This document shows positions 3,049-62,940 of a DNA stretch of 64,000 bases, piece after piece; the stretch's first letter is position 1, and each line of letters starts with the position of its first letter. The position numbers and the translations under genes are program-made. This DNA comes from Gracilinanus agilis (taxonomy: Eukaryota), in NCBI RefSeq assembly GCF_016433145.1, contig NC_058131.1, positions 35,793,650-35,857,649 of the forward strand, given 5' to 3'. The notes under the pieces are model-generated. The model was not told where the DNA came from. It searched no databases and saw nothing but the letters and a program-made list of their open reading frames with translations.

Positions 3049-3480
3049 AACCATTCTTGATAAAAATACAAGATATGTATAAAAACTTTTAATTTCAAAC
3101 ATTTAAATGAAAGGATACATAAAAAGGTAAACTTGAATTAAAAATGATAAAAGACTAAACAAAGAACTAGCCTTACAGCTGACATTCATATATAGGAGAG
3201 GATAACTATGCCCCCTCAGAATCCTATCATCCTCTGGGGTCACAGAGGGAATCTACTTAGACAGGACCTGAGAGTGGTTCCCTTATGATTTGATCTTTTT
3301 TTAAATTGAAAGAAAGAAAAAAGAAGAATACTCTTGTGGTGGGTGCGTGGGGGGAAGGAAAAGGAAGGTGAGAGTTAAAGTATCTCATATAATGAAGGTA
3401 CACAAGTAGTCATCTCTGTAAGAACTAAAAATATATCTGGGCCATGATCCTGAGCTGAAAAACTGACTATATATTGACAA
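3049..3480 (+). mobile_element. Ancient L1 ORF1-end/spacer relic, part of the V duplication unit
   Basis: Aligns by eye to 36975-37370 and 55440-55570 (e.g. aatgaaggtacacaagtagtcatctctg). Confidence 0.6.
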
Positions 3481-5549
3481 ATTTATTTTATCCCTCTTCA
3501 AAAAAAGAACATGATGATTCCTAAATCTGAGTTGTTTTTAATATGAAAGCTTTCTGTAATCAATCCTGAGGTTTTTCATTTGTGGCAAGATTTCTTTGAA
3601 GGTAAGAGCTAATAACTTCAGAAGACGGTTCAGATTATCTTACAAATTAAATGAAGGTGGGCACCTTGAAGTCTAATTAATGGTGGTTTAGGAGAAAATT
3701 TCTTGAAGAAATATTGTTGTGGGGAGAAGATAGGGAAAATTTGGAAGTTAATTAGAATGTATAAAGTTTAACAAAACACTTAAGAGCTCGATAGTTTTTG
3801 GTTCTTTAATTCTATGATCTTCTTATACAACAGCCCCACTAAATATCTGGGCAATTTGTCTTAGTAGCCATGTCTGGTATGTTGAAATGATGCCTGAAGA
3901 AATCCAGTAGCTCTAATTGTATCAATCAAGTCTTGAGACAGGTTTTTACAGTGCTCACTCCAGTGGTGTTGGTCTAGTTAGTTCCTCAACCTCATTTGTA
4001 CTGCTGGTCCAGGATTCCTTCCCTGACTTGTGAGGTTACAGGGTCTTCCTTCCCTTATCTATGCTGAGGCTGTTTCTTCCACTGCCTTTAAAATCTAGGT
4101 TTTCTGTCTTCTAAAACTAAATCTTAATTCAACTCATTTCTCTTTTCTAATGGCCTTTTTTTTTGCTATATCCAGCCAGGCATTTATCTTTTCATTTGGT
4201 TGATTATTTTTTCAAAACCAACAATGATTTAGTCTCCCCAGAGAAGAGAGGTTTCTCTTGACTATAGCCACAGGGAGCAGATGCCTATTAGAGCCTTCCC
4301 AGGGGACCCTCCAAGCAGGCTTGGCAGGCCTTAGGAAGGACAGATCTCCCAACCATGAGGTCACACCTTCCTTCATATGTACCACTTAGCTAGTCTGGTC
4401 CCCATGTCCTACCTGGCACTGACTCTTGGAGGTGAGACGTGGCCTCACAGGTCTCAAACCTTCAGATCTACAAAAAAAATGATCTCCCCATCCCACTTCC
4501 TCTCCATGCTCTGCCTTCTGTCCTTGGACCACAATCTCCTTCCCCTCCTTCATCATCTTGAACTTGGCCCCTTAGTCCTCCAGCTCTGACAGGTGAGCTC
4601 TGGCTGGATCTTTTCAGAACCGAGGCCTCCACATTACTTACTTCATGATGTACCACTGGGCAATTTCCTCCCTCTTCTCCCAGGTGCTCTTATACTTACA
4701 TGTGTGAAAAAGAATTGATTCCTTCATCCATGATGTAGCCATAGTTTATTACGATCTATCTGTAATTTATTTCCAATCAGTATTTCTCTGATTATTGTGA
4801 TTGAATAAATAATTATTCAATATACCCAGAGTGTAAAGATAACCTAACGAAGAAACTTTAATCAGTTTCTATTGTGACTTTTTAGAACTGTATCCTCTGC
4901 ATATAATCCTATTAGATACCCACTGTTATTAGTGTAAGATTCGATTTAATAGTAAGCAAAAGTCCCAATTGTTGATTAGAGAATCGGGTGTAAGAATCAG
5001 TAATAAATAATCATATTGTGAGTAAAATGACATGGAAAAACTCTTCAAGGGCCTCACAAAATACCTTTGCCAAGGCAGGGTGTGCCGAGCCTTCAGTGAC
5101 CCGGAATGTGTCCAGATTGATGACGTCTCAGTTGTCTACTAAGTGACCATGTCTGTTACCACATATGGGGCAGAGAGGATGGGATTAGCCACAACAAGAA
5201 GATTCCACTTTCTTGAAGAAGGAAACTTTCTAAAAATGAGATTCAGGTTGTCCTCTCTGAGAAGAGACATTCATCTGGCCCCCATCCCATTCTGGGGGAG
5301 TTTGAGTCATCTGACTCTTCTGTGTAGACGATGTACACTTGTCCTTTCCTCAGCTCTGGGTATTAGACCTCACTACTGGGCAAGTCTTGACCTTGGTGTT
5401 ATAATTTACTGATCCAATAATAAATGTCAGTTTGGCTCAGAAAATTATTTCTTAGTATTTCTTTTTCTTTTATAATATTTACCTGTAGTCAATCCAGATT
5501 AATCATATAGGTATTGATTTTTGTTATGCTCATGTCAAGTTAAGGAGAT

Positions 5550-6135
5550 CCAGGAATCCAGAGACTCTTTACCAGATCCCAGCCCTCATCCTGATCTCAT
5601 TTTAGTGCTGAGACCCAGTTCCTGGAGATTTCATATGAATGAGAGAAGCTGCTGGGATAGAATCTGTCTTCCATACTCTGAGCTGGATCACTCTTGGCTT
5701 AAGCCTGTTGGTTTCTAGCTAAAACTTTATAATCTGAACTTCGTTCTCATTTTTGGACCAGCTAGTCAGATTTTAGTTAGCCAGAAGGGTTTAGGCAGAT
5801 AGAGAGAGTAAACAGAGTAGCCCAATGGTGTTGGGACCAAGCAGGTCCTTGCAGACCCGTATCTGAGTGGGAGGAGCTAGGACCTGGTAGCTTAGGAAAC
5901 TCTTTTTACTCTGGTTCTCTACCCATCCTGCTATTCATAAAGTAAACATCATTTATTTGAATAGCATCAAACCACAGTCAGATTTTGTGTTAAACTTACA
6001 GAGGACTGGTGTGGCTGACCCCTGGGCCTGCAAACTAGGCCAGAATCACTGTTTGGGTCATCACTGATCAAAACCTAAATCTACACTAAGGGACCTCTAT
6101 TTAGTGGGTAAAACCCCCCATTCTTTCAATATAAA
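5550..6135. mobile_element. LTR-like insertion flanked by a 38-bp direct repeat
   Basis: 5512-5549 and 6136-6173 match at 37/38. The paralogous site near 57170-57210 has one copy and no insert. The insert ends ..cccattctttca. Confidence 0.5.
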
Positions 6136-6225
6136 TATTGATTTTTGTTATGCTCATGTCAAGTTAAAGAGATTCTATCTTATATTAGGTTTTCAGGCCA
6201 TAAGAAGGAGCTTTAAGACTATACT

Positions 6226-6430
6226 GGGAAAACTAGTGGCTCAGTAGATAAAGAACCAGGCCTGGAGATGGGTGGTCCTGTGTTCAAATCTGACCTCAGA
6301 CACTTCCTAACTGTGTGACCCTGAACAAGTCACTTAATCCCCATTGCCTAGCCCTTACCACTCTTTCACTTTGGAACCAATGTCTAGTATTGATTCTAAG
6401 ATGGAAGGTGAGGTTTTTTTTTTTTTTAAA
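6226..6430 (+). mobile_element. tRNA-derived marsupial SINE
   Basis: A box (tggctcagtag), B box (gttcaaatc), core tgtgaccctg..caagtcactt and a marsupial tail. Confidence 0.85.
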
Positions 6431-6758
6431 TACTGTATATTAAGAGCCATGAGTACACTCTCTTAACCACAAAACTGTCCCAGCTAAAGAACTTCTACCC
6501 AATTTATGAGTCAATGGGAAGGATATCTCAAAGTCAGTCAGAGCACACATCACTGGATACACTCCTTTATTTAAATCTATTTCTTCTCATTTTATTTTTT
6601 CTATCTAAAGGTCCTTCCCCAAAGCTTTACTGGTGTAACTGTTTTCTTTTTTTTTTCGTATTCAGGTGTAGGAGTAGAGGGGAAATTGCTTAGTAAAACA
6701 CGTGTCTTTAAATTGGGCAAATATTCCTGCCTTTGGACAACATTTAAGATTCCATCCC

Positions 6759-7313
6759 TTGCCCTTCGATTGGGAAATGGTTGAGCAAATTGTGGTATCT
6801 GATGGTGATGGAATACTATTGTGCTGAAAAGAATAATGAACTAGAGGAATTCCATGTGAACTGGAAAGACCTCCAGGAACTGATGCAGAGTGAAAGGAGC
6901 AGAGCCAGAAGTACATTGTACACAGAGACTGATACACTGTGTGTGGTAAAATCGAATGTAATGGACTTCTGTACTAGCAGCAGTGCAATGACCCAGGACA
7001 ATTCTGAGGGACTTATGAGAAAGAATGCTGTCCAGATCCAGAGAAAGAACTGTGGGAGCAGAAACACAGAAGAAAAACAACTGCTTGATCACATGGGTCG
7101 ATGGGGATATGATTGGGGATGTAAACTTTAAGCAATCACTCTAATGCAAATATTAATGATATGGAAATAGTTCTGGATCAGTGACACATATAAAACCCAG
7201 TGGAATTGCTCCTTGGCTATGGGAGTGGGGTGGGAGGAGGGAAGGGGAAGAATATGAATCATTTAAGCATGGAAAAATTTTCTTAATCAATAAAATTCAA
7301 TTGATGGCAAAAA
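6759..7313 (+). mobile_element. 5'-truncated L1 3' fragment with 13-bp TSD
   Basis: TSD AAGATTCCATCCC at 6746-6758 and 7314-7326. The body is ORF2 C-terminus/3'UTR. The paralog at ~57988 is an empty site. Confidence 0.9.
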
Positions 7314-9900
7314 AAGATTCCATCCCCAAACTTCTGCATGTAAGATGATTTCAAAAATAATTTCTCTGCAGATTTGATACATAAGTAAATAAAGACTGAG
7401 GGAAGAAAGGGTACATGTTATCCTGCACAATTCTGATCTTCTTTTCTGGGGGCAGACTCCAATTTCCTCCTTTTCCTTCCTTTTGTCTGCTCAAATGCCT
7501 TCAGGTCTTGCCTGACAGCTCTGGCTGCTACCTTACTTTAAATCCTAATTTCCTCATAACAGTGATCAGGAGACTCCTGCTAGTTGGGAGGAGCCAATGC
7601 ATTCAGTTTACTCTCTCTTCCCTACCACGATGAGGTTTAGAGTCATACTGGAGCCTATCATTATCCTGGTTCCTGGTATTAGAATAATGCCATTTACTTC
7701 GTCCACTCTCTCATTCTCTTTTTCTTGCTACATAAATCATATCAAGGAGCAGACTCAGTGCTTAGGAGAGTTCTGTCAAAGAAGACAGGACTGAGAGATA
7801 GATGCTAGATGTCAGTAGTGGTCCTCTTCCCCCAACTCAGCAGGATGATCACACTTAATGTCAGACAAATCTTATTTCCTTTGAGATGGGGCTGCAGAGT
7901 TAGTTCATCAAGATCATGCTTTAGTAGAATTGACCTGGCTTTTGGGAAAGCATCTGAAAAAAGTCTTTGATACTCCCTATCTTGGAAAAAAATGGAGAAG
8001 AATGGGTCTATAAATTAAGGAACTGGCTAGTTGCTGGTCTCTATGCAGTCATAAAAGGTGGCAGCTTTCAAAGGAGGATTCATGTAAGGGACACAGGTTA
8101 TCTATGCTTATCCTCTGCTAGCTAACATTTTTATCCAAGTCTTGGATAAAGGTACAGATGGAAAGCCTAAGCAGATTTACATATTCTACACAACTGGGAA
8201 GGGAACTAAGACACTGAATGACAATCAGCATCCAAAAAAAAAAGGAAAGAATGAAAAAAGAGGAATACTGATGGGCTAGAACACTATTTACAGCCAGTGG
8301 GATCATTCATTTTATTTGATTATGCATATTTGTCATAAGAGTTTTGTTTTTCTTTTTTCCAAGAGTGGAAATAGGAACTGCCAGAAATAGGAGAAAAGCA
8401 TCAAAAAGAACATAAAGAAATAGTGTCAGTGAGGTGTCATTATTAATGCATAAAAGAGAACAGTAGGAAGGTCAGAAAGAAGCTGAGATGAGCAGAAGAG
8501 TTTTGAAACTTATAGGTTGAATTTATTATTTGCATAAAAACAAAAGCAAATTTACACATAATAGAAATCTTCAGCTTCATGAGCAATCCAAAGTTTCTAG
8601 CTTATTTCATATATAGAAATGCTCATTTTATTTGTTTTTTTCCTGGTACTTATTTCACTTGACATTCCTTCCTAGGTTTCTCAGGGAATGCTCCTGAACA
8701 CCAAGGAGCAATGTCATGAATAAATAAATTTCCCAAAGTGAAATTTCATATCCTATGTTTATTTTCTCCACATATCTTTTTAAAACAGATTTTCAGAATA
8801 AACCTTATTTCTAAAAAACTGGAAATACTTATTTGATCAGAGTGCTGATCAGAGGTTACTGTGGGAATGGAGGTATCAGCAAATAAGTTACTTTTGACAA
8901 AGAGGAAGAGGATTTTAACTTCTAAGATTGGTAGATAGGAGGAAGAAGGAGGGGATTAAGTTTGTGAGATTCTTAGAGACATACAGGAATATGTTTGGAC
9001 ACAGAAAGAATAGGAATCTCATCAGTCCTAAGGAGGAATGAAAATCTTCCAAAGACCTTCCAAAAATCTCAAATGAAATCAACACATTGGAGACGATCCT
9101 CTGATTCTTTATATGTCTGGAGGCTGGGAAGGTCAGCTCCTGGCCCTCTGAGGACACATTCTGGCTATCGGGCTAACCTTAGCTTCTGGTGAGAAAGTCC
9201 CACATCAGGTAATACCAAACTTCTATCTAGCAAGTTATTGATCTAAGAATATGAATCTCCTTCCATCCATCACCTTATATCTTTCCATCTCCTATGGGTC
9301 CCCTGCAGTACAATGGAATCGTGTAGGGATTGAGTTGTTTAAAGTACAGACAATGGTATGGAAATCGCAGGAACACAGGAGGAAATGCAGAGATCTGAGG
9401 AGGATCATTCCGGTTCCCCAATGGAGAGTGTCCAATTAGGCAAGCCCATTTTCCCCTCAGCCCAGGATCCACTTTGTGCTGTCCCAAGGTGGTTGTGTCT
9501 TCCTTCTCCTTCTCTGAATCTATTGCTTCACCTGTCTTGGAATTTGATCTTTTCATTCTTCTAAAATGAATTTCTCACTCAGGTCACTACCCTTTCCTAA
9601 CAACTTTTTTTGTTGTCTACAAACCAGACATCTGCTTCTCCTCTTCACTAACTTTTTAACCTAAACTCGAATTTCAACCTAGTAACTTCTGGGAAGAGAG
9701 AGAGGCCTCACTTGTTTATGACCACAAACAGTCATAGGCCATGACTTTTCTTTGTGATGCTCTACATAGAGTTGGTGGAGATGAAACTACTGAGACCATT
9801 TAAGTATGAGATAACAATCTCCAGTAAACCCAGTAGAGAGTCTGACCTTCTTCTGGGCTCTGGAGATGAAGCTGAGAGGCCTGAGGTGGTTCTGGGTCTG

Positions 9901-9952
9901 TTTTGCATGGGGAGATCTCAGCCCCCTGCACAAGGCTGTCCTGACATATAAA
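9901..9952 (+). promoter_or_regulatory. Vkappa promoter: octamer variant TTTTGCAT (9901-9908) and TATAAA (9947-9952)
   Basis: Lies ~120 nt upstream of the leader ATG, with the same arrangement at all three intact V genes. Confidence 0.8.
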
Positions 9953-10024
9953 TGCATCTCTATCCCTGTCTGTCTCATTCTGGGCTCAGAGCTCTCTGCC
10001 TGCAGCTCTACAAAGGACACAAGG

Positions 10025-10596
10025 ATGTCCCCATCCCAGCTCCTCTGCCTCCTGCTGCTCTGGGCTCAGGGTAAGACCAGCCACAGGCTAACCTGGCGGG
10101 GAGGTTCTCCAGGAGGTTCCAGAACTAGAAACCATCTGAGGAGGCAGAAGGAGAAGTTCTCTACAGCCAATGGGGATGATGTGTCAGACTCAGGCACAAA
10201 AGAGATGGTCTGAGAGGAGGGAACTCACTGGGGAATTCATAGCACCTGGATGGGGTTCTTTCTCTAAATCTGCTTTTTCTCTTTTCTTCTTTCCATGCCA
10301 GAGTCCAGGACAGCCATTGTGATGACCCAGACTCCAGCCTCCCTGTCTGTGGCTCTGGGAGAGAAAGTCACCATCAGCTGCAGGGCCAGTGAGGACATTA
10401 GGAGTTATTTAGCCTGGTACCAGCAGCCTCCAGGAAAACCTCCCAAACCTCTTATCTATCATGCTTATCATGTAGAATCAGGAGTCCCTGCCGGCTTCAG
10501 AGGCAGGAGATCTGGGACAGATTATACTCTCACAATCAGCAGTGTGAAGGCTGAAGATGTCGGACATTACTACTGTCTGCAGTATGATGATTCTCC
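10025..10596 (+). CDS. IGKV: Ig kappa-type V segment V1, apparently intact (leader 10025-10070; V exon 10302-10596)
   Basis: Leader [16 protein letters not shown]|gtaaga, phase-1 intron ending ccatgccag. V exon AIVMTQTP..C23..[14 protein letters not shown] has no stops. Confidence 0.93.
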
Positions 10597-10624
10597 CACA
10601 GTGATGGAAGCTTGAACAAAAACC
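10597..10624 (+). other. 12-RSS of V1 (consensus)
   Basis: CACAGTG + atggaagcttga (12 nt) + ACAAAAACC. A 12-nt spacer on V is the kappa-type configuration. Confidence 0.97.
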
Positions 10625-10655
10625 TCCCCAGGCTGTTGAGTCCTTCAGCTCAGGG

Positions 10656-11128
10656 CAGCAGCTGCTTCCTGCACAGCATCTGACTCAGAGTCATCAGGGA
10701 GCCCAGGGGAGGGCTGGGACTGAGAGCCCAGTTGGGGGGCCACAGAGCCCAGGCTGCCTCCTCTGACAAGCCATTGGGGAGGGCAAAGAGAGAAGAGGAG
10801 AACCTTCCCTCCAGCCTCTCTCCAGCAGCCTCAGAATCTCCTCTCACACACCTCAGAGAAGCTGGTCCCTTCCTTCCTGCCTGCTCTGCCTTCTCTCTGC
10901 CCCTTCCTGGGGGCTGCTCAGAGGAGGCTCCTCAGGGTTGATTAAGGGAAAGGCCTGGAAGGGCTCCTGGGAAGGGGCTGGCCTGACCCCTCTGAAGCTC
11001 TTCCTATAGTCTGCACTGCCTGGCAGGGCCAGGAGAGGATCCTTAGTGAGATCTTCCTGAGCATCCCATGACAAAGGACACATGAGAGTGTTTGTAACTG
11101 ACTCCAGAGAGACCCAAATGGCAGCTGA
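10656..11128 (+). repeat. Highly conserved post-RSS block (also 53839-54279 and 63579-64000)
   Basis: About 95% identical by eye in three copies. Contains CAGCTG, CATCTG and TGACTCAGAGTCA. Confidence 0.85.
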
Positions 11129-11255
11129 CATTATTATGCCATTATTAGTCCTCCCTGAACACCCCATTTCAATTGAAACTAGAAGAATCAAAGAGAGAGT
11201 CCCAGAGTCCCTATTACACAGCGAGGTTGCATTCAGGGCTATCATTAGGGACCAG

Positions 11256-35049: not shown

Positions 35050-35361
35050 GTTTGGATGATCCAGTCTCCAGCCTCCCAGTATGTGGCTCTGGACAAGAGA
35101 GTCACCCTTACCTGCAGGGCCAGTTGGGGCATTAGCAGTAATTTGGCCTGGTGCCAGCAGTCACCAGGAAAAACGTTCCAAGCCTATCTATGCTGCTACC
35201 TCTCTAGCATCAGGAGTTTGTGCCCACTTCAGTGGCAGTGGGTCTGGGACAGATTATACTCTCATTATTTGCAATGTGGAGGCTGAAGATGTTAAATATT
35301 ACTACTGTGGACAATCTGATGAGTTCTATCTCCCATAATAATGCACGCCTGAACCAAAACT
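35050..35361 (+). pseudogene. IGKV: Vkappa pseudogene psi-A (no recognisable leader, frameshift in FR2, decayed RSS)
   Basis: Two frames give [19 protein letters not shown] and [20 protein letters not shown]. The RSS remnant is cataata-12-accaaaact (35334-35361). Confidence 0.92.
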
Positions 35362-45072: not shown

Positions 45073-45809
45073 AGGGCCAGTTTCACTGGCATTATACTTT
45101 TTCACATATTAAAATAAAAAAGAACATGGAAAATGTATGCCATCTTTATCTGTTTATTAATGGTTATCAGGGTTGGTTTGCTCCTGGCCACACTACATTC
45201 CTGAGGAGTTCCTCATGTACTCTTTCTGGTGACTTGGGGTCTCCAGGGCCCCCTGGGCTCCTATTCTATCCTTCCCCTTTCTAATATCTAAAGGATAAAA
45301 AATAAGAAAGGCAGTCTATTTTCTGTAACTTCTAGGCTGAAAATGGGGCATAGAGGTGTCTCTGATGGGCAAGGAGAGAAAGGGAGAGGTGGGTTCCTGG
45401 GGGCACCATTCAGGGGTCATAGGGACATGGCTTCAGGGAACACTTGGATCCTAGAAGCAAACAGAAATCCAAAGGGTCTGCCTCTCTTCATTGAAGGGTG
45501 GGGTGCAGGTGGAATTGGTTCAGTCCCTGAGGCAGAAGTAATAGGAAGAAAGACTGAAGTAATGAATAAAACCAGAAGAATCTAGTATAGTAGCAATGGA
45601 AAGCATTGACTACCATCAGGCCTCTCTACATTTTAGTACCTTATCCCCAATGCCAACAAAGCCCATCTCAGAAGCAATCTTTTGACAGGTAGGGATAGAT
45701 TTCCTTCTCAGTAAACTTGCTTTTTTTTGTTTGAAAGTCAGAGTACACACTAATGGACATGATTCTTCATCTAGATCTATTTCTTCTCAGTTTCTTCTTT
45801 TCCCCTCAG

Positions 45810-46132
45810 GGTCCTAAGGAGGTATTTTACTGACCCAGTCTCCAGCTTTCCTGTCTGTCACTCCTGGAGAAACAGCCACCATCAATTGAAGAGCCAATCA
45901 GGACATTAGGAAATATTTAGCCCTTTACCAGCAGTCACTGGGGCAAATTCCCAAGTCCATGTTTTATGATGTTTCCAAGATGAGGTCTGGGATCTCTACC
46001 TGCTCCAGTGGTCCTGGGTCTGGGACAGACTACACTCTCACCGTCAGCAAGATGGAGTCAGATGTTGCACATTGCTAGTGTCAGAAATATGATAAATTCC
46101 CTCCCATAGAGCTGCAGTCTTGAATAAAAACC
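45810..46132 (+). pseudogene. IGKV: Vkappa pseudogene psi-B
   Basis: Acceptor cccctcag, then ILLTQSPAFLSVTPGETATIN*. Cys23 is TGA, Trp is lost and YYC is decayed. The RSS remnant is catagag-12-ataaaaacc (46105-46132). No leader was found. Confidence 0.92.
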
Positions 46133-47281
46133 TCCCCAGAGCCTGGAGTCCTTTAGCTCACAGAAGCAACTGCTTTATTCATGGTCTAAAAGCCAGAACA
46201 GCCCTTGAACCCAGGGGAGCAATGGGTATCATTCAGTCATACTCTGGAGGTCAAGAATCCTAGCCTGTCCCATGGTTGTGAGGCAAATAGGGCCAAAAGA
46301 AGAGGATACAGATCCCTCTCCTCTTGCCTGTGACAGACAGGTTCACAATCTACCTTCCTCGTCCTCCAGTCAAGCTGGTCTCCTTGCTCTCACCTTCCCA
46401 AGTCCTTTTCTGTGTAGGCTGCTCACACAAAATCCATCAGTGATCTTCTCATTCAGAGGAAGTATTTGAAGGACTTCTTGGAAGAAACTGAACTGACAAC
46501 TATGAATGCTCTTCAACAGGCTTGCACTGATAGGGAGGACCAGGACAAGATCATTACATCCATTTGGGGGCCTCCCATTTGGGGAATATATCCATAGCTA
46601 AGGCCCTGCCATCACTGAGAAGTCACCAGCTCTTCTCCCCAGAACTGGAGTGCATCAGCAGTGGGCTTGACTGTGACACCTTCAGTAAAAGAATTTTATT
46701 GTCCAAGCTGGGGAAGTGAGCATCATCCTGGAAAGCTTGTTTTAAACTTCTCATTCTAGCCTCTTATCTGTTACTCTCCTGGGGTAAAATAGGGGTGTAA
46801 GTGTTTAGTGTATATCTAGTATCAAGCCCATGTTCCTACATGACACATAGATACTCACTGGCAACCAGGCACTCAAACCTGATCCTTTACCAGCTCTTCT
46901 TCCATTATTTAGCCACTAGTGAGTTCCTTGGACAGCAAGGAGACCAAATCAGTCAACACTTAGAGCAATTAATTCACACTCTTCATTGGAAGGAGAAATA
47001 CTGAAGCAGAAGCTGAAATACTTTTGCCATGTAATGAGAAGACAGGACTTCAGAATTATATTAAATGCAATGTCTCATCATTCAGGAAATGGCTAGAATT
47101 CAAACATGCTTCTTCCCTTTTACAGAAAAGGGCTTAACTTTAAGGGTGGTAGGAGGATTATGTTGTCAGACATGGAAATTATATTGACTTGTTTTGTCTA
47201 ACTATTTTCTGTGCAAAGTTGTGTTAGGATGTATATTTGAGAGGTTACAACCAAGAAAAATGAACAACTAAATATAGTAAC

Positions 47282-51190: not shown

Positions 51191-53085
51191 GACATTCCTG
51201 TCTCCCACACACCCTTCTGGACCCATGTTTAATGTTTAAGGCACCTTCCCTGGTTGTTCCCGCTTAACACCATCCTAAATACGCTGCTCATGTTCAGGTT
51301 CTCTGGGGACATCAAGATAAAAGGGGCTCAGAGGAAACATCATGGACGGACAGTTCTTTAAAAGAATGGATAAGAAGACAAGAACATTTGACACTGTTTA
51401 CATCCAATGGGATCATTTATTTTACTTGACTAAGCATATATGTCAAAGGACTTTGTTTTTCTTTTTTTTTCCAAAAGTGGGGATAGGACGTGATTGGTAG
51501 AAACAGGGAAAGAGCATCAAAAAGAAAATAAGGAAACAGTGTCATTGAGGTATCATTTTTAACGATGAGAAGAGAACAGTAGAAAGGCCAGAAAGAAGCT
51601 GAGATGAACAGAATACCTAAAACTTACAAGTTGAATTTATTATTTACATAAAAAAGAAAAGCAAACTATACATAATAGAAGCCTGTAGCTTCATAAGCAG
51701 TCCTCTATTTCCATCCCACTTTACTATGGAAATGCTCATTTGTTTTGTTTTTTTCCTGGCACAATTTATTTCACTTTACATCCCTTCTGAGTTCCCAGTA
51801 ATGGTTCATGAAGACCTGGGAGCAGATTCATGAATCAAGGAATTGGCCAAAGGAAAATTTCATATCATTATTTATTTTTTCCATATATATTTCTAAATGA
51901 GGTTTTTATAATAAATCCTATTTATAGAAAACTTTGGGAATATATATTTGACTAAAGTGATGATCAGAGGTTGTGTATTTTTTACCAAGATTGGAAGATG
52001 GGAAGAAGAGATAGGTAGTAGGCAGGTGAGATTCTTAGAGAGACACACAGGAGTAGATGTTTGGACACAGAATGATAATCTCATCATTTCCAGTATCGGA
52101 TGAAAATCCTCCACGGCCTCTCTCCTATGCACATCACATCATTGACCTTCCAGAAATCCCATATAGAATATCAACTCAACACACTGAGGACCTTCCTCTG
52201 ATTCTTTGCATTTCTGGAGGCTAGGATTATAATATCCTGACTCTCTGTCTAGGGACTTATTCTGTTTTTTTTTTCTGGTCTGAGGACCTTGCTCTGATTC
52301 CTTAAGTTTCTAGAGGCTAAGAATGTAATGTCCTGCTCTCTATCTGAGGACTCTCATTATTGCCAGATGGTCAGACAGCCTTAAATTCTGATGTTTCATA
52401 TGAACCTCATCATAAAATGACAAACTCCTAAGCAGCAATCACTGCTGGCGACATGTGCATCTGCTTCCATCCATCATCTTCCATCTATCCATTGCCTGCA
52501 GGTCGCCTGAAGATGAACTGAATCAAACGAGGGAGGGAGGAGACTAAAGCACAGACTATGGCATGGAAGTCTCAGGCACATGAAGGCAGAGATCAGCCTG
52601 GAGGAGCCCCTCCAGTTCCCCCCCATCAGGCCCATCTTTCTGTCAGCCCAGGATTCACTGGCTGCCTTCCCAGAGGCTTGTGTCTTCCTCCTCCCGCTCT
52701 CAGCCTCTTCCTTCACCTCTCCCTGAAGTTCTTCTTTTCATTCTTCTTACACTGACCTCTTAGTCAGGTCTCTTCCCTTTTCTAATGACTTTTCTGCCAT
52801 CTACAGTGCAAACATCTCTCTCTCCTCCTCACAGACTCTGCTCTAGGCTCACAGGTCCAGTCTCTTCTGGGGAGACAGAAAGAAAATCAATTTCTCCCTT
52901 GTTTTAGCCACAACTAGCCATCTGGCCTGGCCCTTCCTGTGACCCTGCAGCTGTCCTGGGCAGAGACAGAACCAGAGAGACCATTGAAGCCTGAGATAAC
53001 ATGCTCTGCTGAACCCAGTAGAGAGTCTGGCCTTTATCTGGGCTCTGGAGATGAAGCTGAGAGATTGGAGGTGGTTCTGGGTCTG

Positions 53086-53137
53086 TTTTGCATGGGGAGA
53101 TCTCAGCCCCCTGCACAAGGCTGTCCTGACATATAAA
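53086..53137 (+). promoter_or_regulatory. V2 promoter: TTTTGCAT (53086-53093), TATAAA (53132-53137)
   Basis: Same architecture as V1. Confidence 0.8.
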
Positions 53138-53209
53138 TGCATCTCTATCCCCATCTGTCTCATTCTGGGCTCAGAGCTCTCTGCCTGCAGCTCTGCAAAG
53201 GACACAAGG

Positions 53210-53778
53210 ATGTCCCCATCCCAGCTCCTCTGCCTCCTGCTGCTCTGGGCTCAGGGTAAGACCAGCCACAGGCTAACCCGGGGGAGGTTCTCCAGGAGGT
53301 TCCAAAATTAGACACCATCTGAGGGAGGCAGAAGGAGAAGTTCTCTACAGCCAGTGAGGATGACATGTCAGACTCAGGCACAAAACATGGTCTGAGAGGA
53401 GGGAACTCACTGGGGAATTCATGGCATCTGGATGGGCTTCTTTCCCTAAATCTGCTTTTTCTCTTTTCTTCTTTCCATGCCAGAGTCCATGACAGCCATT
53501 GTGATGACTCAGACTCCAGCCTCCCTGTCTGTGGCTCTGGGAGAGAAAGTCACCATCAGCTGCAGGGCCAGTGAGGACATTGGCTATAGTTTAGCCTGGT
53601 ACCAGCAGCCTCCAGGAAAACCTCCCAAACTTCTTATCTATGCTGCTGATGAGCTGGAATCTGGAGTCCCTGCCCGCTTCAGTGGCAGTGGGTCTGGGAC
53701 AGATTTTACTCTCACAATCAGCAGTGTGGAGGCTGAAGATGTCGGACATTATTACTGTCTGCAGCATTATGATTCTCC
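53210..53778 (+). CDS. IGKV: Ig kappa-type V segment V2, apparently intact (leader 53210-53255; V exon 53484-53778)
   Basis: Canonical splice sites. [49 protein letters not shown]. Confidence 0.94.
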
Positions 53779-53806
53779 CACAGTGATGGAGGCCTGAACA
53801 AAATCC
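53779..53806 (+). other. 12-RSS of V2 (nonamer ACAAAATCC, one mismatch)
   Basis: CACAGTG + atggaggcctga + ACAAAATCC. Confidence 0.95.
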
Positions 53807-56800
53807 TCCCCAGGCTGTTGAGTCCTTCAGCTCAGGGCAGCAGCTGCTTCCTGCACAGCATCTGACTCAGAGTCATCAGGGAGCCCAGGGGAGGACTGAG
53901 AGGCCAGCTGGGGGGCCACAGAGCCCAGGCTGCCTCCTCTGACAAGCCATTGGGGAGGGCAAAGAGAGAGGAGGAGAACCTTCCCTCCAGCCTCTCTCCA
54001 GCAGCCTCAGAATCTCCTCTCACACACCTCAGAGAAGCTGGTCCCTTCCTTTCTCCATGCTCTGCCTTCTAGGAAGCTCCTCAGGGTTCATTAAGGGAAA
54101 GTCCTGGAAGGGCTCCTGGGAAGAGGCTGGCCTGATCCCTCTGAAGCTCCTCCTATAGTCTGTACTGCCTGGCAGGGCCAGGAGAGGATCCTTAGTGAGG
54201 TCTTCCTGAGCATCCCATGAGAAAGGACACGTGAAAGTGTTTGTAACTGAGTCCAGAGAGACCCAAATGGCAGCTGAAAGGATCATACCCTAAAGACCAT
54301 GTCTATAGAGATACAAAAAAGTCTGAAGAAATTAGATTCAAATCTGTTTTTTCCCCAACAATAATGAAATACTCCCAATGGCTGGCTCAAATAGAGGACA
54401 GTTCAGAGTGTCTACCCAAGGCAGCTGGTCCTGAGTGGCCTCTGAGAAATAGGAGAGAAGCAGTGAGGAATTTTCTCTGCTTGTTTAAGGATGGTGGATT
54501 AGAGTGATTTGTGCTTCAACCTTATAATAACCTCAATTTCCAGAGTTGGTATAGACCTCTTGGGAGAACAAAGAATTCTTATATTTATGTCTTCCATTTC
54601 CTAGAAATTCCTGATTTTAGTGCATTTCAGGATATATATTCAGAACATTTTATCAGGTCTATCTGGTCAATACTTGGAACCCTGCTGCTTCTGCCCACAG
54701 TGGTGGGGTGTATAACCCTTCACCAGGAGCCTGAAGGAGGCAGGAGCAAGAAACAGGTCACAGGAAACTTGCTGTGCTCTAAGACTCCTTCCAACTGTTC
54801 AGTGCTTTGTATTATTCTGAGGTTGGGCAGTCCCAAGGAGGCTTGGTCAGGGCAGCCAAAGAATGCAGTGAAGAGACAGAAAGAAAATGTGACAAAAACT
54901 CGAGCCTAAGTCCATGCAGAGAACAAAGCAGGGGGAATGCAGACTGGTCAGTCCTTCAGCATCCAGGAATCCTACCCTCGCAGTAGCTCATTGCACAGAG
55001 TTCGGGGGTTCTGCATTCCTGGGCCATTTAGCTGATGGATCAGAAGCATCTCTGCAGCTCAGGGATGAACCAACCTGATGGGCTCAGTAAGCTGCTGCTT
55101 CTCTGAGTCCAGGCTGGAGAGAAGGGAGGGGGACTGGGATTCATGGGACATTTAAAATCAGTAGGAAATGTATTTATACTTCTGTAATTTACTGATATTT
55201 ACATGAAATTATTAGTAGTAAAATTATTCTCATTTTCAGATTATTCAGACCTGATTTGGAGGACGTGAAAATGATCACATTGAGGGCAGTGGAGGGATTA
55301 TTGTCCATACGCCACAGGGAATCTCCACACTAATGATGTCACAGATCTATGGAAGTTATGAAGCAGCTGCCAGGTCCCTTATGTTTTCACATTAAGAAAA
55401 AAGTGGGAAGAAAGAAAAAGAAAGAGAAATAAGAACACTTTGGGAAGGATATTGGGGGAAGAAAAAGAAGGCTGGAGAAAATGAATTATCTCATGTAATG
55501 AAGGTACACAAGTAGTCATCTCTGGAAGAAATAAAAATTCATTTGGGCCATGATTCTGACTGAAAAAATAGACTTTATTTTGTGGGTAAATACAGTCTTG
55601 AGATAGATCTCTACAGAGCTCACTCCAATGGTATTGTTTCAGGTCCCCAATCCCATTTTTACTGTTGGTCCAGAAACCTTGCCCTGACTGCTTCCCAAGG
55701 TTACAGGGTCTTCCTTCTTCCCTCATCTGCTCTGAATCTGTTTCTTCTGCTGCCTTTAAAGTCTGGGTTTTTTCTCTTCTGAAACTAAATCTTGATTCAG
55801 CTCCTTTCTCTTTCCTAATAGCCTTTTTTGCTGCATTTAGCCAGGCATTTATCTCTCCATTTAGTTGATTATTTTTTCAAAGCCCCAGAGAAGAGAGGTT
55901 TCTCTTGTTTATAGCCACAGGGAGCAGATGCTTATTAGAACCTTCCCAGGGGACCCTCCAAGCAGACTTGGCCGACCTGGAAGGACAGATCTCCCAACCA
56001 TGAGGTCACACCTTCCCTCACATGTACCAATTAGCTAGTCTGGCCCCCATGTCCTACCTGGCACTGACTCCTGGAGGTGGCCTCAGAGGTCTCAAACCTT
56101 CAGGTGTACGAGAGAAAGAATGATCTCCCCATCCCACTTCCTCTCCATGCTCTGCCTTCTGTCCTTGGACTACAATTCCCTTCTCCTCCTCCATCATCTT
56201 GGACTTGGCCCCTCAGTCCGCCAGCTCTGATAGATGAGCTCTGGCTGGATCTTTCCAGAACTGAGGCCTCCACATTACTTACTGGCCATTTTCATGACGT
56301 GCCACTGGGCAATTTCCTCCCTCTTTTCCCAGGTGCTCTTACACTTACATGTGTGAAAAAGAATTGATTGATTCATCTGTGATTTAGCCATAGTTTGTTA
56401 TGACCTGCCTTTTATTTATTTCCCATCAGTTTTGCTTAATTGAACATGATTGCATAAGTGATTATTCAATATACCCAGAGTGTAAAAGATAACCAAATAA
56501 ACAAACTTAAGTCAACTTATATCGTGCCTTTTTAGGACTGAATCCTCTGCATGTAATCCTATTAGATACCCACTATTATAATAATACATGGTAAGCATAG
56601 ATTTCATAGTAAGCAAAAATCCCAATTGCGGATTAAATAATTGTGTATAAGAATCAGTAATCAAAAATCATACTGTGAGTAAAATGACATGGAAAAATTC
56701 TTCAAGGGCTTCACAAAATACCTTTGCCAAGGCAGGGTGTGTCTGAGCCTTCAGTGACCCGGAATGTGTCCAGATTGATGACATCTTAGTTGGCTACAGA

Positions 56801-57257
56801 GTGACCATGTCTGTTACCACATATGGGGCAGAGAGGATGGGATTAGCCACAAGACAAGAAGATTCCACTTTCTTGAAGAAGGAAACTTTCTAAAAATGAG
56901 ACTCAGGTTGTCCTCTCTGAGAAGAGACCTTCAGCTGACCCCCAGCCCATTCTGGGGGAGTTTGAGTCATCTGACTCTTTGGTGTAGACGATGCACACTT
57001 GTCCTTTCCTCAGCTCTGGGTCTTAGACCTCACTACTGGACATGTCTTTGATCTTGGTGTTATAATTTACTTATCCAATAATAAATGTCAGTTTGGCTCG
57101 GAAAATTACTTCCTAGGATTTATTTTTTCTTTATAATACTCACCTGTAGTCAATCCATATTGATCACAAAGACATTGATTTTTGTTATACTCTTGTCAAG
57201 TTAAAGGGATTTTATCTTAGGATTTTAAGCCATAAGAAGGAGGTTTAAGACTATACT

Positions 57258-57672
57258 GGGAAAAGTAGTGGCTCAGTAGATAGAGAGCCAGGCCTGGAGA
57301 TGGGTGGTCCTGGGTTCAAATCTGGATTCAGACACTTCTTAGCTATGTGACCCCAGCTGGGCAAGTCACTTAAGCCCCATTGCTTGAGACTTATAACTCT
57401 TATGCCTTATACATGATACTTAGTATTGATTCTAAGACTGATAGTTAGGATTTTTAAAAAATGCTCTAGAAGGTAGCTGGGTGGCTCAGTGGATTGAGAG
57501 CCAGGCCTAGAGATGGGAGGTCCCAGATTCAAATCTGGCCTCAGATACTTTTTCGCTGTGTGACCACAGCTGGGCAAGTCACTTAACCCCCATTGCCCAG
57601 CCCTTACCACTCTTCCTCCTTGGAACCAATACATACTATTGAATCTAAGATGGAAGGTGAGGATTTTTAAAA
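57258..57672 (+). mobile_element. Two tandem SINEs (~57258-57460, 57469-57672)
   Basis: Two A/B-box heads and two tails. Copy A has a single SINE at this position. Confidence 0.8.
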
Positions 57673-58691
57673 AATACTGTATACTAAGGGCCATGAGTAC
57701 ACTCTCTCAACCGCAAAAATATCCCAGCTAGAGAACTTCTACCCAAGAGGACTTATAAGTCAATGGGAAGGATATCTCAGAGTCAGTCAGATCACACACT
57801 ACTCGTTATGCTCCTTTATTTTAAATCTATTTCTTCTCATTTTCTTTTTTCCATCTAAAGGTCCTCCCCCAAAACTTTACTTCTGTAGCTATTTTTCTTT
57901 TTTCCCCCCTATTCAGGTGTAAGGGAAATCACTAGAAAAACACATCTCTTTAAATTGGGCAAATACTCTTGCATTTGGACAACATTTAAGATTCCATCCA
58001 CAAATTTCTGGATGTAAGATGATTTCTAGAATAATTTCTCTGCAGATTTGATCCATAAGTAAAGAAAGACTAAGACAAGAAAGCGTAGAAATTATCCTGA
58101 ACAACTGTGATCTTTTTTTTGGGGGGGGTCAGACTCCAATTCCCTCCTTTTCCTTCCTTCAAATGCCTTCAGTACAGAGTCCATTCAGTCCTGCCTTCCC
58201 TCCTCCAGACTCTTAACCCTTTTCCCTCCTGCCCCTACCCCAGGCTTCTTCAATGCCATTACTTGAGGACAGTTGATTCCTTCAAGGAAGTGATGGAGGG
58301 AAAGAAGATTTGTTCCCTTAAAGCACACGGAGGAGTAAAACAATAGCAGACCTTACACTCTAAGGGGCTCCATGTTAAGCCCTCAAAAGGATCATTCATT
58401 GGAATGGGGTGATCAGGTCATGAGCTAGAGTAAAGTGAAGGATGTCAGGAGCTGTCGGGTCCTTCCTGACTCCAGGTCCTGATCTCTTTCCCTTGAAAAT
58501 ATTGCTTCTCATGCAATCCTTCTAGCCATTTAGAACCATAAAACTGACCCAAACTGAAAGGAACTAAGTAGGGGAGAAATAGCAGGAGCACACAGTAAAT
58601 GAGGGTCAAGGAAGGAAGTATATCTTTGGGGTAACAAGTCTCAGGTCTTCCTCTGAGCTTATAACTAGAACAATCCTCCGCACCTCAATAA

Positions 58692-59656
58692 TGTAAAAGA
58701 ACTAATTTTTTAAAGTCTAAGCTGAGTTTTTAATTGCTGTCCCTTACTGGGGTTTTGCTAGATCCAGTCAAGCAGGATGATCTCTTCAGAGACAGAATGC
58801 AAAAATGACTGCACCCCCTGTCTCAGACCAGAAAGTAACCAATCTGACTGCTTCTTCAAAGGAACAGAGTTTATTTAAGTTGTAGTTGAAGATGGGGTTA
58901 GGAATGTGGGTTGTGGATGTTTCTCTATCACTAATAAAACTATCTTATTACCCACCAATCTGACTTTGCTTTAAAGTCTCTTCAGTCCTCGACTTTTTGA
59001 GGCTACACTGATTACCCTCTCTGCCTAAATGATTTCCCTTTTATTCTAATCTAATTCTAGGCTGAACCCACATAGGAAATAGTCTCTAGAGTATTGATAG
59101 AATAGAGATGAATCAAATATTAGGAGTGATTAAGTCTACCCTGGTGAGGCTAAAGCCTCCCCAAAGGTAAACTAAGCAGTTCAGTCAACTCCCTTTGAGA
59201 TTTGGTCTTCTCAGAGTAACAGCAGAGCCAGACACTTGAAGGTCTTCAGGATTTTGGTAAAATATCTCTCTGGAACAATTTGAACTTTCACAGAAGGTTG
59301 GAGCTGGGTCTTGGAGATGCTTTTGCCTCCAGAGTCTAGGACCAACTCCCTCACCTGGACATTGGTTTCCCAGGATTCTCCTTCCCTCTGTATCAATGGA
59401 AAGTTTGAACCCTGGACTTCATCTACCATAAGTCCCTTAGTTTTCCCCAAATTCCCTTTAATCTCTTCTGTGCCTCCAAGTTTGCATGGTCACGTTATTG
59501 TTTTATAGTTGGCTGTAACTCTTCCCTCTTTCTCTTTGGTTCCTGGGAAGCGAGCTGGTTAGTAACCTTTTAGTTAGTCTCTTTGTTATTTTATTATTAA
59601 TAAAATATTTATAACTATAATATTTGGTATTTTGCATATTAATTTTAAAATCCACA
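58692..59656. mobile_element. LTR-like segment absent from copy A
   Basis: TGTAAAAG..ATCCACA with AATAAA near 59600. No TSD identified. Confidence 0.4.
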
Positions 59657-60831
59657 CCTCCAAGATTCTAAAAGAGTTTGCTCTTGCTTCTCCTGGTTCA
59701 ACTGCATTCCATGTCACTCTGCTTTCTCTACTCTGTAATCTTGTTTCCTTTCCAAAATCTCTCCTTCGCACATTCACTTCCTCCACGCTCTCTTTCTCTT
59801 CTCCTTACTATATAAAGCAAATCAAGGAGCAGACTCAGTGCCCAAGAGAGCTCTGTCAAAGAAGACAGGATGGAGAGAGAGACACACACACACACACACC
59901 GGAGGTCAGTAGTGGTCCTCTTCTCTCAACTCAGCAGGAAGATAACACCTAATGTCAGAGAAATCACATTTTCTTTAAAATAGAGTTGCAGAGTTAGTTC
60001 ATCAAGATCATGCTTTAGTAGAGTTGACCTAGCTTTCAGGAAAGCTTCTGGAAAAGTCTCTTATGCTCCTTTTTTAAAATAAACAACAAACAAATAAATG
60101 GATAAATAAATTAAAAAGGAGATTAGTGGGTCAAAAGACCAGAGAGTTCTATAGATTAAGGAACTAGCTAGTTGCTGCATCCAAAAACAGTTAAGAATGA
60201 AAAAGCAGAAACATCTGACTGGCTAGAACATTGTTTTACAGTTAGTGGAATAATTAATTTTACTTGATTATGCATATTTGTCATAATGGCTTTGTTTTTC
60301 TTTTTTCCAAGAGTGGGAATGGGAACTGCCAGAAAATAGGAGAAAAGCATCAAGAAGAACATAAAGAAATAGTGTTAGTAAAGTGTCATTATTAATACAG
60401 AAAAGAGAACAGTAAGAAGACCAAAAGGAAGCTACAATAAGTAGGAGAGTGTTGAAAATTACAGGTTGAATTTATTATTTGCATAAAAATAAAAGCAAAT
60501 TTACATATAATAGAAATCTGAATCTGCAGCTTCATGAGCAATCCAGTGTTTCCAGCTTATTTCATATATAGAAACGCTCATTTTATTATTTTTTTTCCTG
60601 GTATTTATTTCACTTGACATCTCTTCCTAGGTTTCTCAGGAATTGTTCCTGAACACTGAGGAGCAACGTCATGAATCAAGAAATTCCCAAAAGTGTAATT
60701 TCATATCCTATGTTTATTTTCTCCACATATGTTTCTAAAACAGTTTTTTCTAATAAATCTTATTTCTAAAAAACTGGAAATGCCTACTTGATTAGAGTGA
60801 TGATCAGAGGTTCCTATGGGAATGTAGGTAT

Positions 60832-61649: not shown

Positions 61650-62373
61650 GTATCAGAAAACAGATTACTTTTGACTAAGAGGAAGAGGATTTTAACCTCC
61701 AAGATTGGTAGATGGGAGGAGGTAGGAGGGTATTAGTGACATTCTTAGAGATACACAGGAATAAAAGTTTAGACCCAGAAAGAAGGGGAATCTCATTAGT
61801 CCCAAGGAGGAATGAAAATCTTCTCTGTTTTGTGTACTTCATAACCATGACCTTCCAGAAATCCCATATGAAATCAACACACTGGAGATGATCGTCTGAT
61901 TCTTTATATTTTTGGAGGCTGTGAAGGTCAGCTCCTGGCCTCTGAGGACACATTCTGGCTATCTGGCTAACATTTGTTTATGGTGAGAAATGTCCCTCAT
62001 CAGGTCAAACCAAACTCTTATCTAGCAAGTTATTGAACTAAGAATATGAATCTCCTTCCATCTATCACCTTATAGTTTTCCATCTCCTCTGGGTCCCCTG
62101 AAATCCAAATGAATCAAGTAGGGAGTGAGGAGCTTAAAAGTACAGACGATAGTATGGAAATCACAGGAACATGGGAAGAAATGCAGAGATCGGTCTGAAG
62201 AGGATCATTCCAGTTCCCCAATGGAATCTGTCCAATTCAGCAAGCCCATTTTTCCCTCTGCTCAGGATCCACTTTGTGCTGTACCAAGGTGGTTGTATCT
62301 TCCTTCTACTCTGGACCCATTGCTTCATCTGTTTTGGAATTTGATCTTTTCATTCTTCTAAAATGAATTTCTC

Positions 62374-62868: not shown

Positions 62869-62940
62869 TGCATCTCTATCCTTGTCTGTCTCATTCTGGG
62901 CTCAGAGCTCTCTGTCTGCAGCTCTACAAAGGACACAAGG

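What the first reader, a model, noticed from the sequence alone, without database searches (positions are those of the whole stretch)
10086..10655. Mosaic V units: an exchangeable intron+V cassette between two homogenised homology arms
Relationships among the three copies switch at sharp boundaries. Far upstream, A resembles C and B is distant. Promoter plus leader (~9840-10085, 53025-53270, 62755-63000) are ~95% identical in all three. Across the intron, V exon and RSS, A resembles B and C is distant (intron roughly 70%). From ~35 nt past the nonamer all three are ~95% identical again for over 400 bp. Simple duplication cannot give this pattern; it implies germline gene conversion or double crossover. 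Hypothesis: the conserved arms act as recurrent landing pads that let V cassettes be swapped between units while regulatory context is retained. Identities were estimated by eye.
Basis: partly seen in the sequence, partly recalled or inferred. Interest (0 to 1): 0.72.

Follow-up and report, generated by a model that had tools for sequence, protein, structure and literature searches.

The report
Patchy gene conversion among opossum Vkappa genes
Three antibody light-chain V genes in an opossum are patchworks: their promoter/leader and a 480-base stretch after the gene are nearly identical, while the part between comes in two old versions. This is a clear new example of the known copy-and-paste repair (gene conversion) between gene copies.

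Summary
Three intact Vkappa units (A about 9.9-11.1 kb, B 53.1-54.3 kb, C 62.8-64.0 kb) change relationship at sharp boundaries.

| Segment | Pattern (JC distance) |
|---|---|
| Upstream | A near C (0.12), B far (0.38-0.40) |
| Promoter/leader, 9883-10083 | all 0.015-0.04 |
| Intron + V exon + RSS + 31 nt, 10084-10655 | A near B (0.06-0.10), C far (intron 0.33) |
| Downstream, 10656-11137 | all 0.03-0.04 |

Site patterns differ between segments (chi-square p = 1e-23; max-chi-square, 0 of 10000 permutations).

A and C sit in colinear 8-kb duplicated blocks that are 80-86% identical. The arms are therefore 5-6 times less diverged than their own background, and the cassette is more diverged.

Public contigs suggest roughly 50-85 family copies share this ~1.3-kb module in the same species. 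Three other organisms hold it with letters fixed in all their copies but absent here. That points to concerted evolution, not plain purifying selection.

Best reading: recurrent interlocus gene conversion in a large Vkappa family, with C's cassette outside the exchange pool. The "landing pad" idea fits as a description but is unproven as a function.

This is a known kind of event. The scan noted similar patchy conversion on other DNA of this genome (PATE-like and smell-receptor paralogues).

The parts
3309..11080 (+). Block 1 of an ~8-kb segmental duplication. It contains unit A and is colinear with block 2 (55417-64000).
   Evidence: BLASTN chains at 80-86% identity outside the arms.
9355..9882 (+). 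Upstream segment U of unit A. A is near C (JC 0.12) and B is far (0.38-0.40). Family-wide homology starts at about 9812-9882.
   Evidence: Summed contig depth jumps in the 9812-9875 bin.
9883..10083 (+). Promoter/leader arm P of unit A. It holds an octamer-like TTTTGCAT (9901-9908), a TATA-like TATAAAT (9947-9953), the ATG at 10025, the leader exon 10025-10070 and the first 13 nt of the intron. The B copy is 53068-53268 and the C copy 62799-62999.
   Evidence: Sequence read. Eight variable sites in 201 columns. Leader translation and GT donor.
10084..10655 (+). Cassette K of unit A, the finding itself. It comprises the rest of the intron (to 10301), the V exon 10302-10596, the RSS (heptamer 10597-10603, 12-nt spacer, nonamer 10616-10624) and 31 nt beyond. 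A is near B; C is far.
   Evidence: V-set Pfam match E = 6.6e-16.
10656..11137 (+). Downstream arm D of unit A, about 482 nt. It is 59% GC with no CpG, its three copies form a star-like tree, and it ends sharply.
   Evidence: After 11137 the sequences of A, B and the family consensus all differ.
53068..54277 (+). Unit B, P+K+D: P 53068-53268, K 53269-53837 (V exon 53484-53778, RSS from 53779, nonamer with one mismatch), D 53838-54277. Its upstream homology to A (51391-53067) is old, 55-77% identical.
62799..64000 (+). Unit C, P+K+D: P 62799-62999, divergent K 63000-63577 (V exon 63219-63518, RSS from 63519, intron 35% GC), D 63578-64000, cut by the window end.
55417..64000 (+). Block 2 of the segmental duplication. 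It contains unit C.
35050..35335 (+). Frameshifted Vkappa pseudogene. It is used as an outgroup and has no P or D arm.
45791..46556 (+). Vkappa pseudogene with stop codons. Its downstream flank keeps a weak trace (68% identity) of the D arm at 46451-46556.

Best explanation
The three units belong to a large Vkappa family of an opossum. In this family a module of about 1.3 kb runs from about 20-70 nt upstream of the octamer to about 510 nt past the RSS. Recurrent germline interlocus (non-allelic) gene conversion keeps this module nearly uniform between copies.

A and C are positional paralogues from an 8-kb block duplication with about 16% background divergence. B is an older paralogue, about 30% diverged upstream.

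Conversion tracts have overwritten the promoter/leader and the downstream 482 nt in all three units. In A and B they also overwrote the intron, V exon and RSS, using the dominant family version. In C that middle part is an old lineage, about 0.33 substitutions per site in the intron. It either was never overwritten or came from a donor outside the pool. Once that diverged, mismatches would stop heteroduplex extension at its edges and keep the boundaries sharp.

Shown: the mosaic, its statistics, the block background, the age of C's cassette, the family-wide and species-specific uniformity, and the GC bias.

Inferred: conversion as the process, its recurrence, and the escape of C's cassette.
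For: - **Incongruent distances between adjacent segments.** Site type by segment gives p = 1e-23, and the max-chi-square breakpoint is reached by 0 of 10000 permutations.
- **Departure from the block background.** A and C lie in colinear blocks at 80-86% identity. Their arms differ by only 2.5-3.1% (Fisher p = 8e-5 and 5e-6 against the adjacent upstream segment) and their introns by 27%.
- **One old split.** The intron distance of C to A/B (0.33) equals the upstream distance of B to A/C (0.38; p = 0.53), as expected if a single old split is sampled in two different combinations.
- **C is not accelerated.** Relative-rate tests with two outgroup pseudogenes give 21 vs 28 and 18 vs 27 unique changes.
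- **Family size.** In a same-species run the summed contig depth rises from 1-4 copy equivalents to about 50-85 at 9812-9875 and stays high to beyond 11137. Collapsed contigs of depth 487 and 635 stand against about 25 for a single copy.
- **Species-diagnostic letters.** Three other organisms hold the module with letters found in all their copies but in none here: 9915 in all three; 10128 and 10811 in two of them and in part of the third's copies; 10857 in two only. Long cross-species pieces in D differ from A by about 9%, against 3% among A, B and C and 12% for the single-copy upstream piece.
- **Four-gamete violation** inside D between 10757 and 10879.
- **GC content.** P is 54-56% and D 57-60% GC, the A/B intron 50%, C's intron 35% and the window 42%. 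The strong/weak asymmetry in the intron is 35:7, p = 1.5e-5.
- **No constraint outside the pool.** The D arm has decayed to 68% identity behind an out-of-family pseudogene, so it is not under universal constraint.
- **Precedent.** Germline conversion among V family members is reported in PMC2187977 and PMC2189069, and interlocus conversion in IGK in 10.1101/006866.
Against: - Only three copies lie in the window, so the direction and number of events cannot be resolved.
- The promoter/leader arm is functional DNA, and part of its uniformity may be constraint.
- The copy estimates rest on summed k-mer depth of Logan contigs, which the tool warns is not a copy number.
- The cross-species pieces are not known to be orthologous, and the organisms are coded, so their evolutionary distance is known only from one upstream contig.
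- A–B divergence in the intron (6.1%) is not significantly above that in the D arm (3.6%; p = 0.22). A simpler history therefore fits about as well: recent common origin of P+K+D plus one replacement in C.
Confidence: 0.8

Rival explanations
1. One reading: the two arms are maintained as landing pads, so that V cassettes are repeatedly swapped between units while each unit keeps its promoter and position. This would be a selected germline diversification device.
For: One cassette type sits behind two upstream contexts, and two cassette types sit behind one context. In the same-species run the arms have roughly 1.5-2 times the summed depth of the cassette. Two contigs leave the A sequence 4 nt into the intron for a third intron type, so further arm-sharing units with other cassettes probably exist. 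The module ends are sharp.
Against: Nothing shows selection for exchange. The A/B cassette carries species-diagnostic letters of its own (10128, 10136), so it is homogenised together with the arms rather than moved between them. C's cassette is AT-rich and keeps ancestral letters, as if it had long been outside the pool. A boundary at the leader donor is also expected from coding constraint. Sharp boundaries arise passively once the divergence blocks heteroduplex extension.
Confidence: 0.1
2. Purifying selection keeps both arms nearly invariant over a long time. A single crossover or conversion inside the conserved arms moved a B-type cassette into A, and no homogenisation took place.
For: This needs only one event. 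The P arm holds the octamer, the TATA box, the 5'UTR and the leader exon. The arms are detectable in four organisms at 85% identity or more.
Against: Cross-species pieces of the D arm differ by about 9%, near the 12% of the single-copy upstream piece and three times the within-genome 3%. Letters are fixed in all copies of one species and absent from the others. The D tree is star-like (6, 8 and 6 private sites) instead of following the block tree, which predicts about two thirds B-private sites. D has decayed to 68% behind an out-of-family pseudogene. D has no CpG at 59% GC, and no known element was found in it.
Confidence: 0.08
3. The pattern is an artefact, either of assembly (paralogous reads collapsed or chimerically joined) or of alignment.
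For: Multi-copy families are hard to assemble. No listed same-species contig bridges 10084 or 10655.
Against: Every segment of every copy has private differences, so no copy is a splice of the other two. All three units show the same architecture. Contigs from other organisms do bridge leader to A/B-type intron (10046-10175) and RSS flank to D arm (10615-10779, 10614-10776). The boundaries are gap-free stretches of the alignment.
Confidence: 0.02

Closest known systems
Germline gene conversion among members of one immunoglobulin V family: the mouse T15 VH family (PMC2187977, PMC2189069), and, from my own knowledge and not checked here, human Vkappa (Bentley and Rabbitts 1983).
   Same: Paralogous V segments exchange short tracts in the germline. 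Variants are shared between family members in patchy combinations. Exchange coexists with selection on the binding loops.
   Different: Here the family is much larger and marsupial. The homogenised module has sharp ends and includes 482 nt of non-coding DNA after the RSS. One unit keeps a deeply diverged intron, V exon and RSS between converted flanks.
Interlocus gene conversion between the proximal and distal copies of the human IGK locus (10.1101/006866).
   Same: It is the same locus type, and a tract of raised identity was detected against the background of a segmental duplication.
   Different: That tract is 16.7 kb between two large inverted duplicates. Here the tracts are 0.2-1.3 kb between tandem units in direct orientation.
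Peak of divergence inside duplicates that undergo conversion, for example exon 5 of the red and green opsin genes (reviewed in PMC3924837; islands of divergence in PMC3728101).
   Same: Flanks are kept alike by conversion, and a bounded middle part stays diverged.
   Different: In the opsin case the peak marks a small target of selection. Here the peak is 570 nt, and its most diverged part is the intron, so selection on the V exon is only inferred.
Patchy conversion noted by this scan elsewhere in the same genome (PATE-like paralogues, s1-185005; twin smell receptors, s1-176219).
   Same: Promoter, signal exon and non-coding parts are overwritten while the part coding for the binding domain is skipped.
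   Different: Those cases are two-copy. This is a family of tens of copies with species-wide homogenisation. I did not check those notes.
Programmed cassette systems: chicken pseudo-V conversion, trypanosome VSG and Neisseria pilin (from my own knowledge).
   Same: Conserved flanks guide the copying of a variable middle part.
   Different: Those are somatic or clonal and unidirectional, going from promoterless donors into an expression site. Here all units have a promoter and an RSS, and the exchange is germline and evolutionary. This locus is not a member of that group.

Membership tests
Interlocus (non-allelic) gene conversion / concerted evolution | Adjacent segments of the same paralogues give incongruent relationships with sharp breakpoints. 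| tested here: met
   chi-square p = 1e-23; max-chi-square reached by 0 of 10000 permutations.
Interlocus (non-allelic) gene conversion / concerted evolution | Tracts are much less diverged than the duplicated block that contains them. | tested here: met
   The block background is 80-86% identical, against 96.9-97.5% for A-C in the arms. Fisher p = 8e-5 and 5e-6.
Interlocus (non-allelic) gene conversion / concerted evolution | Paralogues within a species are more alike than copies between species, and substitutions are fixed across all copies of one species. | tested here: met
   letters at 9915, 10128, 10811 and 10857. About 3% divergence within the genome against about 9% between organisms. 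Caveats: these are Logan contigs, the organisms are coded and orthology is unknown.
Interlocus (non-allelic) gene conversion / concerted evolution | GC-biased composition of the exchanged tracts. | tested here: met
   arms 54-60% GC against 42% for the window; intron asymmetry 35:7, p = 1.5e-5. Polarity is not rooted.
Interlocus (non-allelic) gene conversion / concerted evolution | Conversion events seen directly, as polymorphic tracts in haplotypes or pedigrees. | not testable with these tools
   The single read-laying run was used on contigs. Short reads of paralogues would mis-map onto arms that are 97% identical.
Functional Vkappa gene segment | Octamer and TATA box, leader exon, GT-AG intron, open V-set exon with the conserved Cys-Trp-Cys, and an RSS with a 12-nt spacer. 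| tested here: met
   kappa V hits. The nonamer of B has one mismatch. A has an unusual FR3 (RGRRSG in place of SGSGSG).
Functional Vkappa gene segment | Use in rearranged, expressed light chains. | not tested
   No RNA run was listed as holding the stretch.
Peak of divergence kept by selection within converting duplicates | The diverged island coincides with a target of diversifying selection. | tested here: inconclusive
   For A-B, pN/pS is 1.46 in the CDRs and 0.75 in the frameworks, on few sites. The island's most diverged part is the intron.
Programmed cassette-exchange systems | Promoterless donor cassettes copied one way into a dedicated expression site. | tested here: not met
   All three units carry a promoter, a leader and an RSS.

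The most novel reading that the evidence does not exclude
The ~1.3-kb module, from promoter to 482 nt past the RSS, has the same sharp ends in an estimated tens of copies. It could be a unit of exchange whose ends are set by sequence features, such as a meiotic recombination hotspot or an unrecognised regulatory element in the downstream arm. The arms would then work as homology arms that shuffle V cassettes among chromosomal positions, and this would be maintained because it diversifies which V genes sit in favourable recombination contexts.
Probability: 0.1. Interest if true: 0.7.

Novelty: new member of a known kind. Interest (0 to 1): 0.35.

Why it matters
This is a clean, quantified case showing that birth-and-death duplication alone does not describe the evolution of this marsupial light-chain V family. 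A short module is kept uniform across an estimated tens of copies and differs from other species by fixed letters, while an old cassette survives inside it.

For annotation, it warns that trees built from leaders or flanks and trees built from V exons will disagree. For repertoire work, it suggests many family members share one promoter and one post-RSS flank.

The 482-nt downstream arm has no known function. It would be the one part worth testing.

Tried and rejected
- **More V units with flanks.** I tried to fetch them through a Monodelphis protein hit; it is not on record in the contig collection. The other marsupial hits are UniRef-only with no contigs.
- **Closer relative of C's V exon.** A second protein search found none. 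The best hit is 71%, to the same Monodelphis family, so no donor lineage could be named.
- **Family consensus beyond the D arm.** The sequence that follows the D arm in other copies does not occur in the window.
- **Known RNA families.** Rfam finds nothing in 9300-11400 at E up to 0.1.
- **Dispersed repeat as the cause of the high D-arm depth.** Rejected. In the window the arm occurs only behind V units. Contigs of other organisms join it to the RSS. Its depth equals that of the V exon framework and the intron.
- **C-specific acceleration.** Rejected by relative-rate tests.
- **Assembly chimera.** Rejected because every segment carries private differences.
- **CTCF or other motif scans of the D arm.** Not run, because I hold no checked matrix. 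An E-box (CAGCTG) and an AP-1-like TGACTCA near 10660-10687 were seen by eye only.
- **Spliced product.** The leader exon and V exon were not joined. Only the V exons were searched, by reference.

Full report
**What is there.** The window has no N and is a Vkappa array.
- Earlier notes of this scan call the genome an opossum. The best protein hits of the V exons are Monodelphis domestica Ig V domains at 75% identity, followed by kappa V regions of other mammals.
- tblastn finds five Vkappa exons: A 10304-10597, a frameshifted pseudogene at 35050-35335, a pseudogene with stop codons at 45821-46102, B 53486-53779 and C 63239-63514.
- A, B and C each have an octamer-like TTTTGCAT, a TATA-like box, a 46-nt leader exon with a GT donor, an AG acceptor, an open V-set exon (Pfam E 1e-16 to 1e-18) and a heptamer / 12-nt spacer / nonamer signal.
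- The leader and V exons were not joined. Only the V exons were searched, by reference.

**The observation.** A three-way alignment, site patterns and per-segment Jukes-Cantor distances give the following.

| Segment | Coordinates | Columns | A-B | A-C | B-C |
|---|---|---|---|---|---|
| Upstream (U) | 9355-9882 | 492 | 0.38 | 0.12 | 0.40 |
| Promoter/leader arm (P) | 9883-10083 | 201 | 0.015 | 0.025 | 0.041 |
| Intron | 10084-10301 | 214 | 0.063 | 0.34 | 0.33 |
| V exon | 10302-10598 | 297 | 0.097 | 0.20 | 0.18 |
| RSS plus 31 nt | 10599-10655 | 57 | 0.055 | 0.25 | 0.27 |
| Downstream arm (D) | 10656-11080 | 390 | 0.037 | 0.031 | 0.037 |

- The distribution of which copy is the odd one out differs between segments (chi-square 121, p = 1e-23).
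- A max-chi-square scan places the switch from B-odd to C-odd between 10010 and 10040, and none of 10000 permutations reaches that value.
- The dense run of C-specific sites starts at 10084, 13 nt into the intron, and ends at 10655, 31 nt past the nonamer.

- A lies in a block (3309-11080) that is colinear with the block holding C (55417-64000), at 80-86% identity outside the arms. A and C are therefore positional paralogues of an 8-kb duplication.
- Against that background their arms are 5-6 times less diverged (Fisher p = 8e-5 for P and 5e-6 for D, against the adjacent upstream segment). Their cassettes are more diverged.
- B is an older paralogue, 55-77% identical upstream.
- The distance of C's intron to A/B is statistically the same as the distance of B's upstream region to A/C (p = 0.53). 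This fits one old split sampled in two combinations.
- C's cassette is not merely fast-evolving. With either pseudogene as outgroup, the unique changes are balanced (21 vs 28; 18 vs 27).
- The D arm ends sharply at about 11137 in A and 54277 in B. Beyond that point A, B and the consensus of other family copies are unrelated.
- D occurs nowhere else in the window, except for a 68% trace behind the pseudogene at 46451-46556. No Rfam family matches.

**Family and species level.** One call laid Logan contigs of four public runs on 9300-11200 at 85% likeness or more.
- Run X1 (organism A) is taken to be the window's species, because one contig has a single difference in 193 nt.
  - Its summed contig depth is 1-4 copy equivalents upstream (about 25 per copy).
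  - It jumps to about 1300-2150 in the 9812-9875 bin and stays at about 500-2000 to the end, dipping only at the CDRs.
  - Collapsed contigs of depth 487 (10205-10369) and 635 (10795-10925) differ from A by 3 letters and 1 letter.
  - The tool warns that this is not a copy number. As a rough guide, some 50-85 copies share the arms and perhaps half to two thirds of them share the A/B-type cassette.
- Runs of three other coded organisms hold the module too.
  - One single-copy contig of organism B covers 9341-9953 at 88% identity.
  - Long pieces of organism B in the D arm differ from A by about 9% (80 of 876 letters). A, B and C differ from each other by about 3%.
  - At 9915, no copy here shows the letter that all copies of all three organisms carry.
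  - At 10128 and 10811 the same holds for two of the organisms, and for only part of the third's copies.
  - At 10857 it holds for two of the organisms; the third has the same letter as here.
  - That pattern is the signature of concerted evolution or of a very recent expansion. Expansion alone is excluded by the older flanks of A, B and C.
- Inside D, positions 10757 and 10879 show all four allele combinations once the family fractions are counted. Exchange is therefore patchy even within the arm.
- Contigs of other organisms bridge leader to A/B-type intron and RSS flank to D arm. That arrangement therefore predates these species.

**Composition.**
- The window is 42% GC. P is 54-56%, D is 57-60% (with no CpG in A), the A/B intron is 50% and C's intron is 35%.
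- Where the intron of C differs from A/B at strong/weak sites, A/B hold G or C in 35 cases against 7 (p = 1.5e-5).
- The sequences that exist in many copies are GC-enriched, and the low-copy ones sit at background. This is what GC-biased gene conversion would produce. Without an outgroup the polarity is inferred.

**Mechanism.** I commit to recurrent germline interlocus gene conversion within a large Vkappa family (confidence 0.8).
- Tracts of 0.2-1.3 kb keep a promoter-to-post-RSS module uniform.
- A and B carry the dominant version throughout the module.
- C takes part with its arms only. Its cassette is an old lineage that escaped or was imported.
- High divergence at its edges then blocks heteroduplex extension and keeps the boundaries sharp.
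- Constraint on the promoter and leader probably adds to the uniformity of P.
- Diversifying selection on the CDRs is suggested but weak (A-B pN/pS 1.46 in CDRs against 0.75 in frameworks, on few sites).
- The history cannot be resolved from three copies. Two histories need three events each:
  - whole-module conversion of all three units, followed by replacement of C's cassette;
  - conversion of A by the B type, plus two separate arm conversions in C.

**Rivals.**
- Purifying selection on the arms plus one crossover (0.08) is contradicted for D by four results: near-neutral divergence between organisms, species-fixed letters, a star-like tree, and decay behind the out-of-family pseudogene.
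- An artefact (0.02) is contradicted by the private differences in every segment.

**Comparison with what is known.**
- Germline conversion among V family members has been argued since the 1980s (PMC2187977, PMC2189069).
- Interlocus conversion is documented in the human IGK locus (10.1101/006866).
- A diverged peak between converted flanks is a described pattern (PMC3924837, PMC3728101).
- The scan itself noted patchy conversion in PATE-like and smell-receptor paralogues of this genome (not checked by me).
- This is therefore a new, unusually clear member of a known kind. No paper found here describes it for opossum Vkappa, but the main opossum immunoglobulin genomics paper is not in the searchable library.

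**Limits.**
- Only three copies were available.
- Only one reads call was allowed, and it used contigs only.
- The organisms are coded.
- No RNA run holds the stretch.

Noticed in passing
window 11150-11330: Directly after A's downstream arm lies a degenerate V fragment. A framework-3 relic at 11257-11313 is 72-77% identical to the V exons. It is preceded by about 45 nt that, in contigs of two other organisms, is followed by a V exon start (joints 11195/11197 to 10310). It looks like an internally deleted V pseudogene fused to the arm.
   Followed up: partly
window 4440-4510 and 56078-56151: Leader-like relics, 73-75% identical to 9981-10053, sit at equivalent places in the two duplicated blocks. 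No detectable V exon lies behind them.
   Followed up: partly
I did not examine it.
   Followed up: no
window 10464-10530: Unit A has private changes clustered at the start of framework 3: GFRGRRSG where B and C have the canonical RFSGSGSG / RFSGSWSG. The reading frame is open, but the gene may be functionally impaired.
   Followed up: no
window 10656-11137: The downstream arm has 59% GC but not a single CpG. About 40 would be expected from its base composition. This implies long-term germline methylation and decay despite the high GC.
   Followed up: partly
window 52184-52352: Two tandem copies of 74 nt, 81% identical, lie upstream of unit B.
   Followed up: no
window 9923-10069: A Monodelphis domestica database protein (P0002) is an over-extended gene model. 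Its first 54 residues are a translation of the promoter and 5'UTR, and they match unit A at 88% over residues 6-54. The promoter arm therefore also exists in an annotated Monodelphis V gene.
   Followed up: partly
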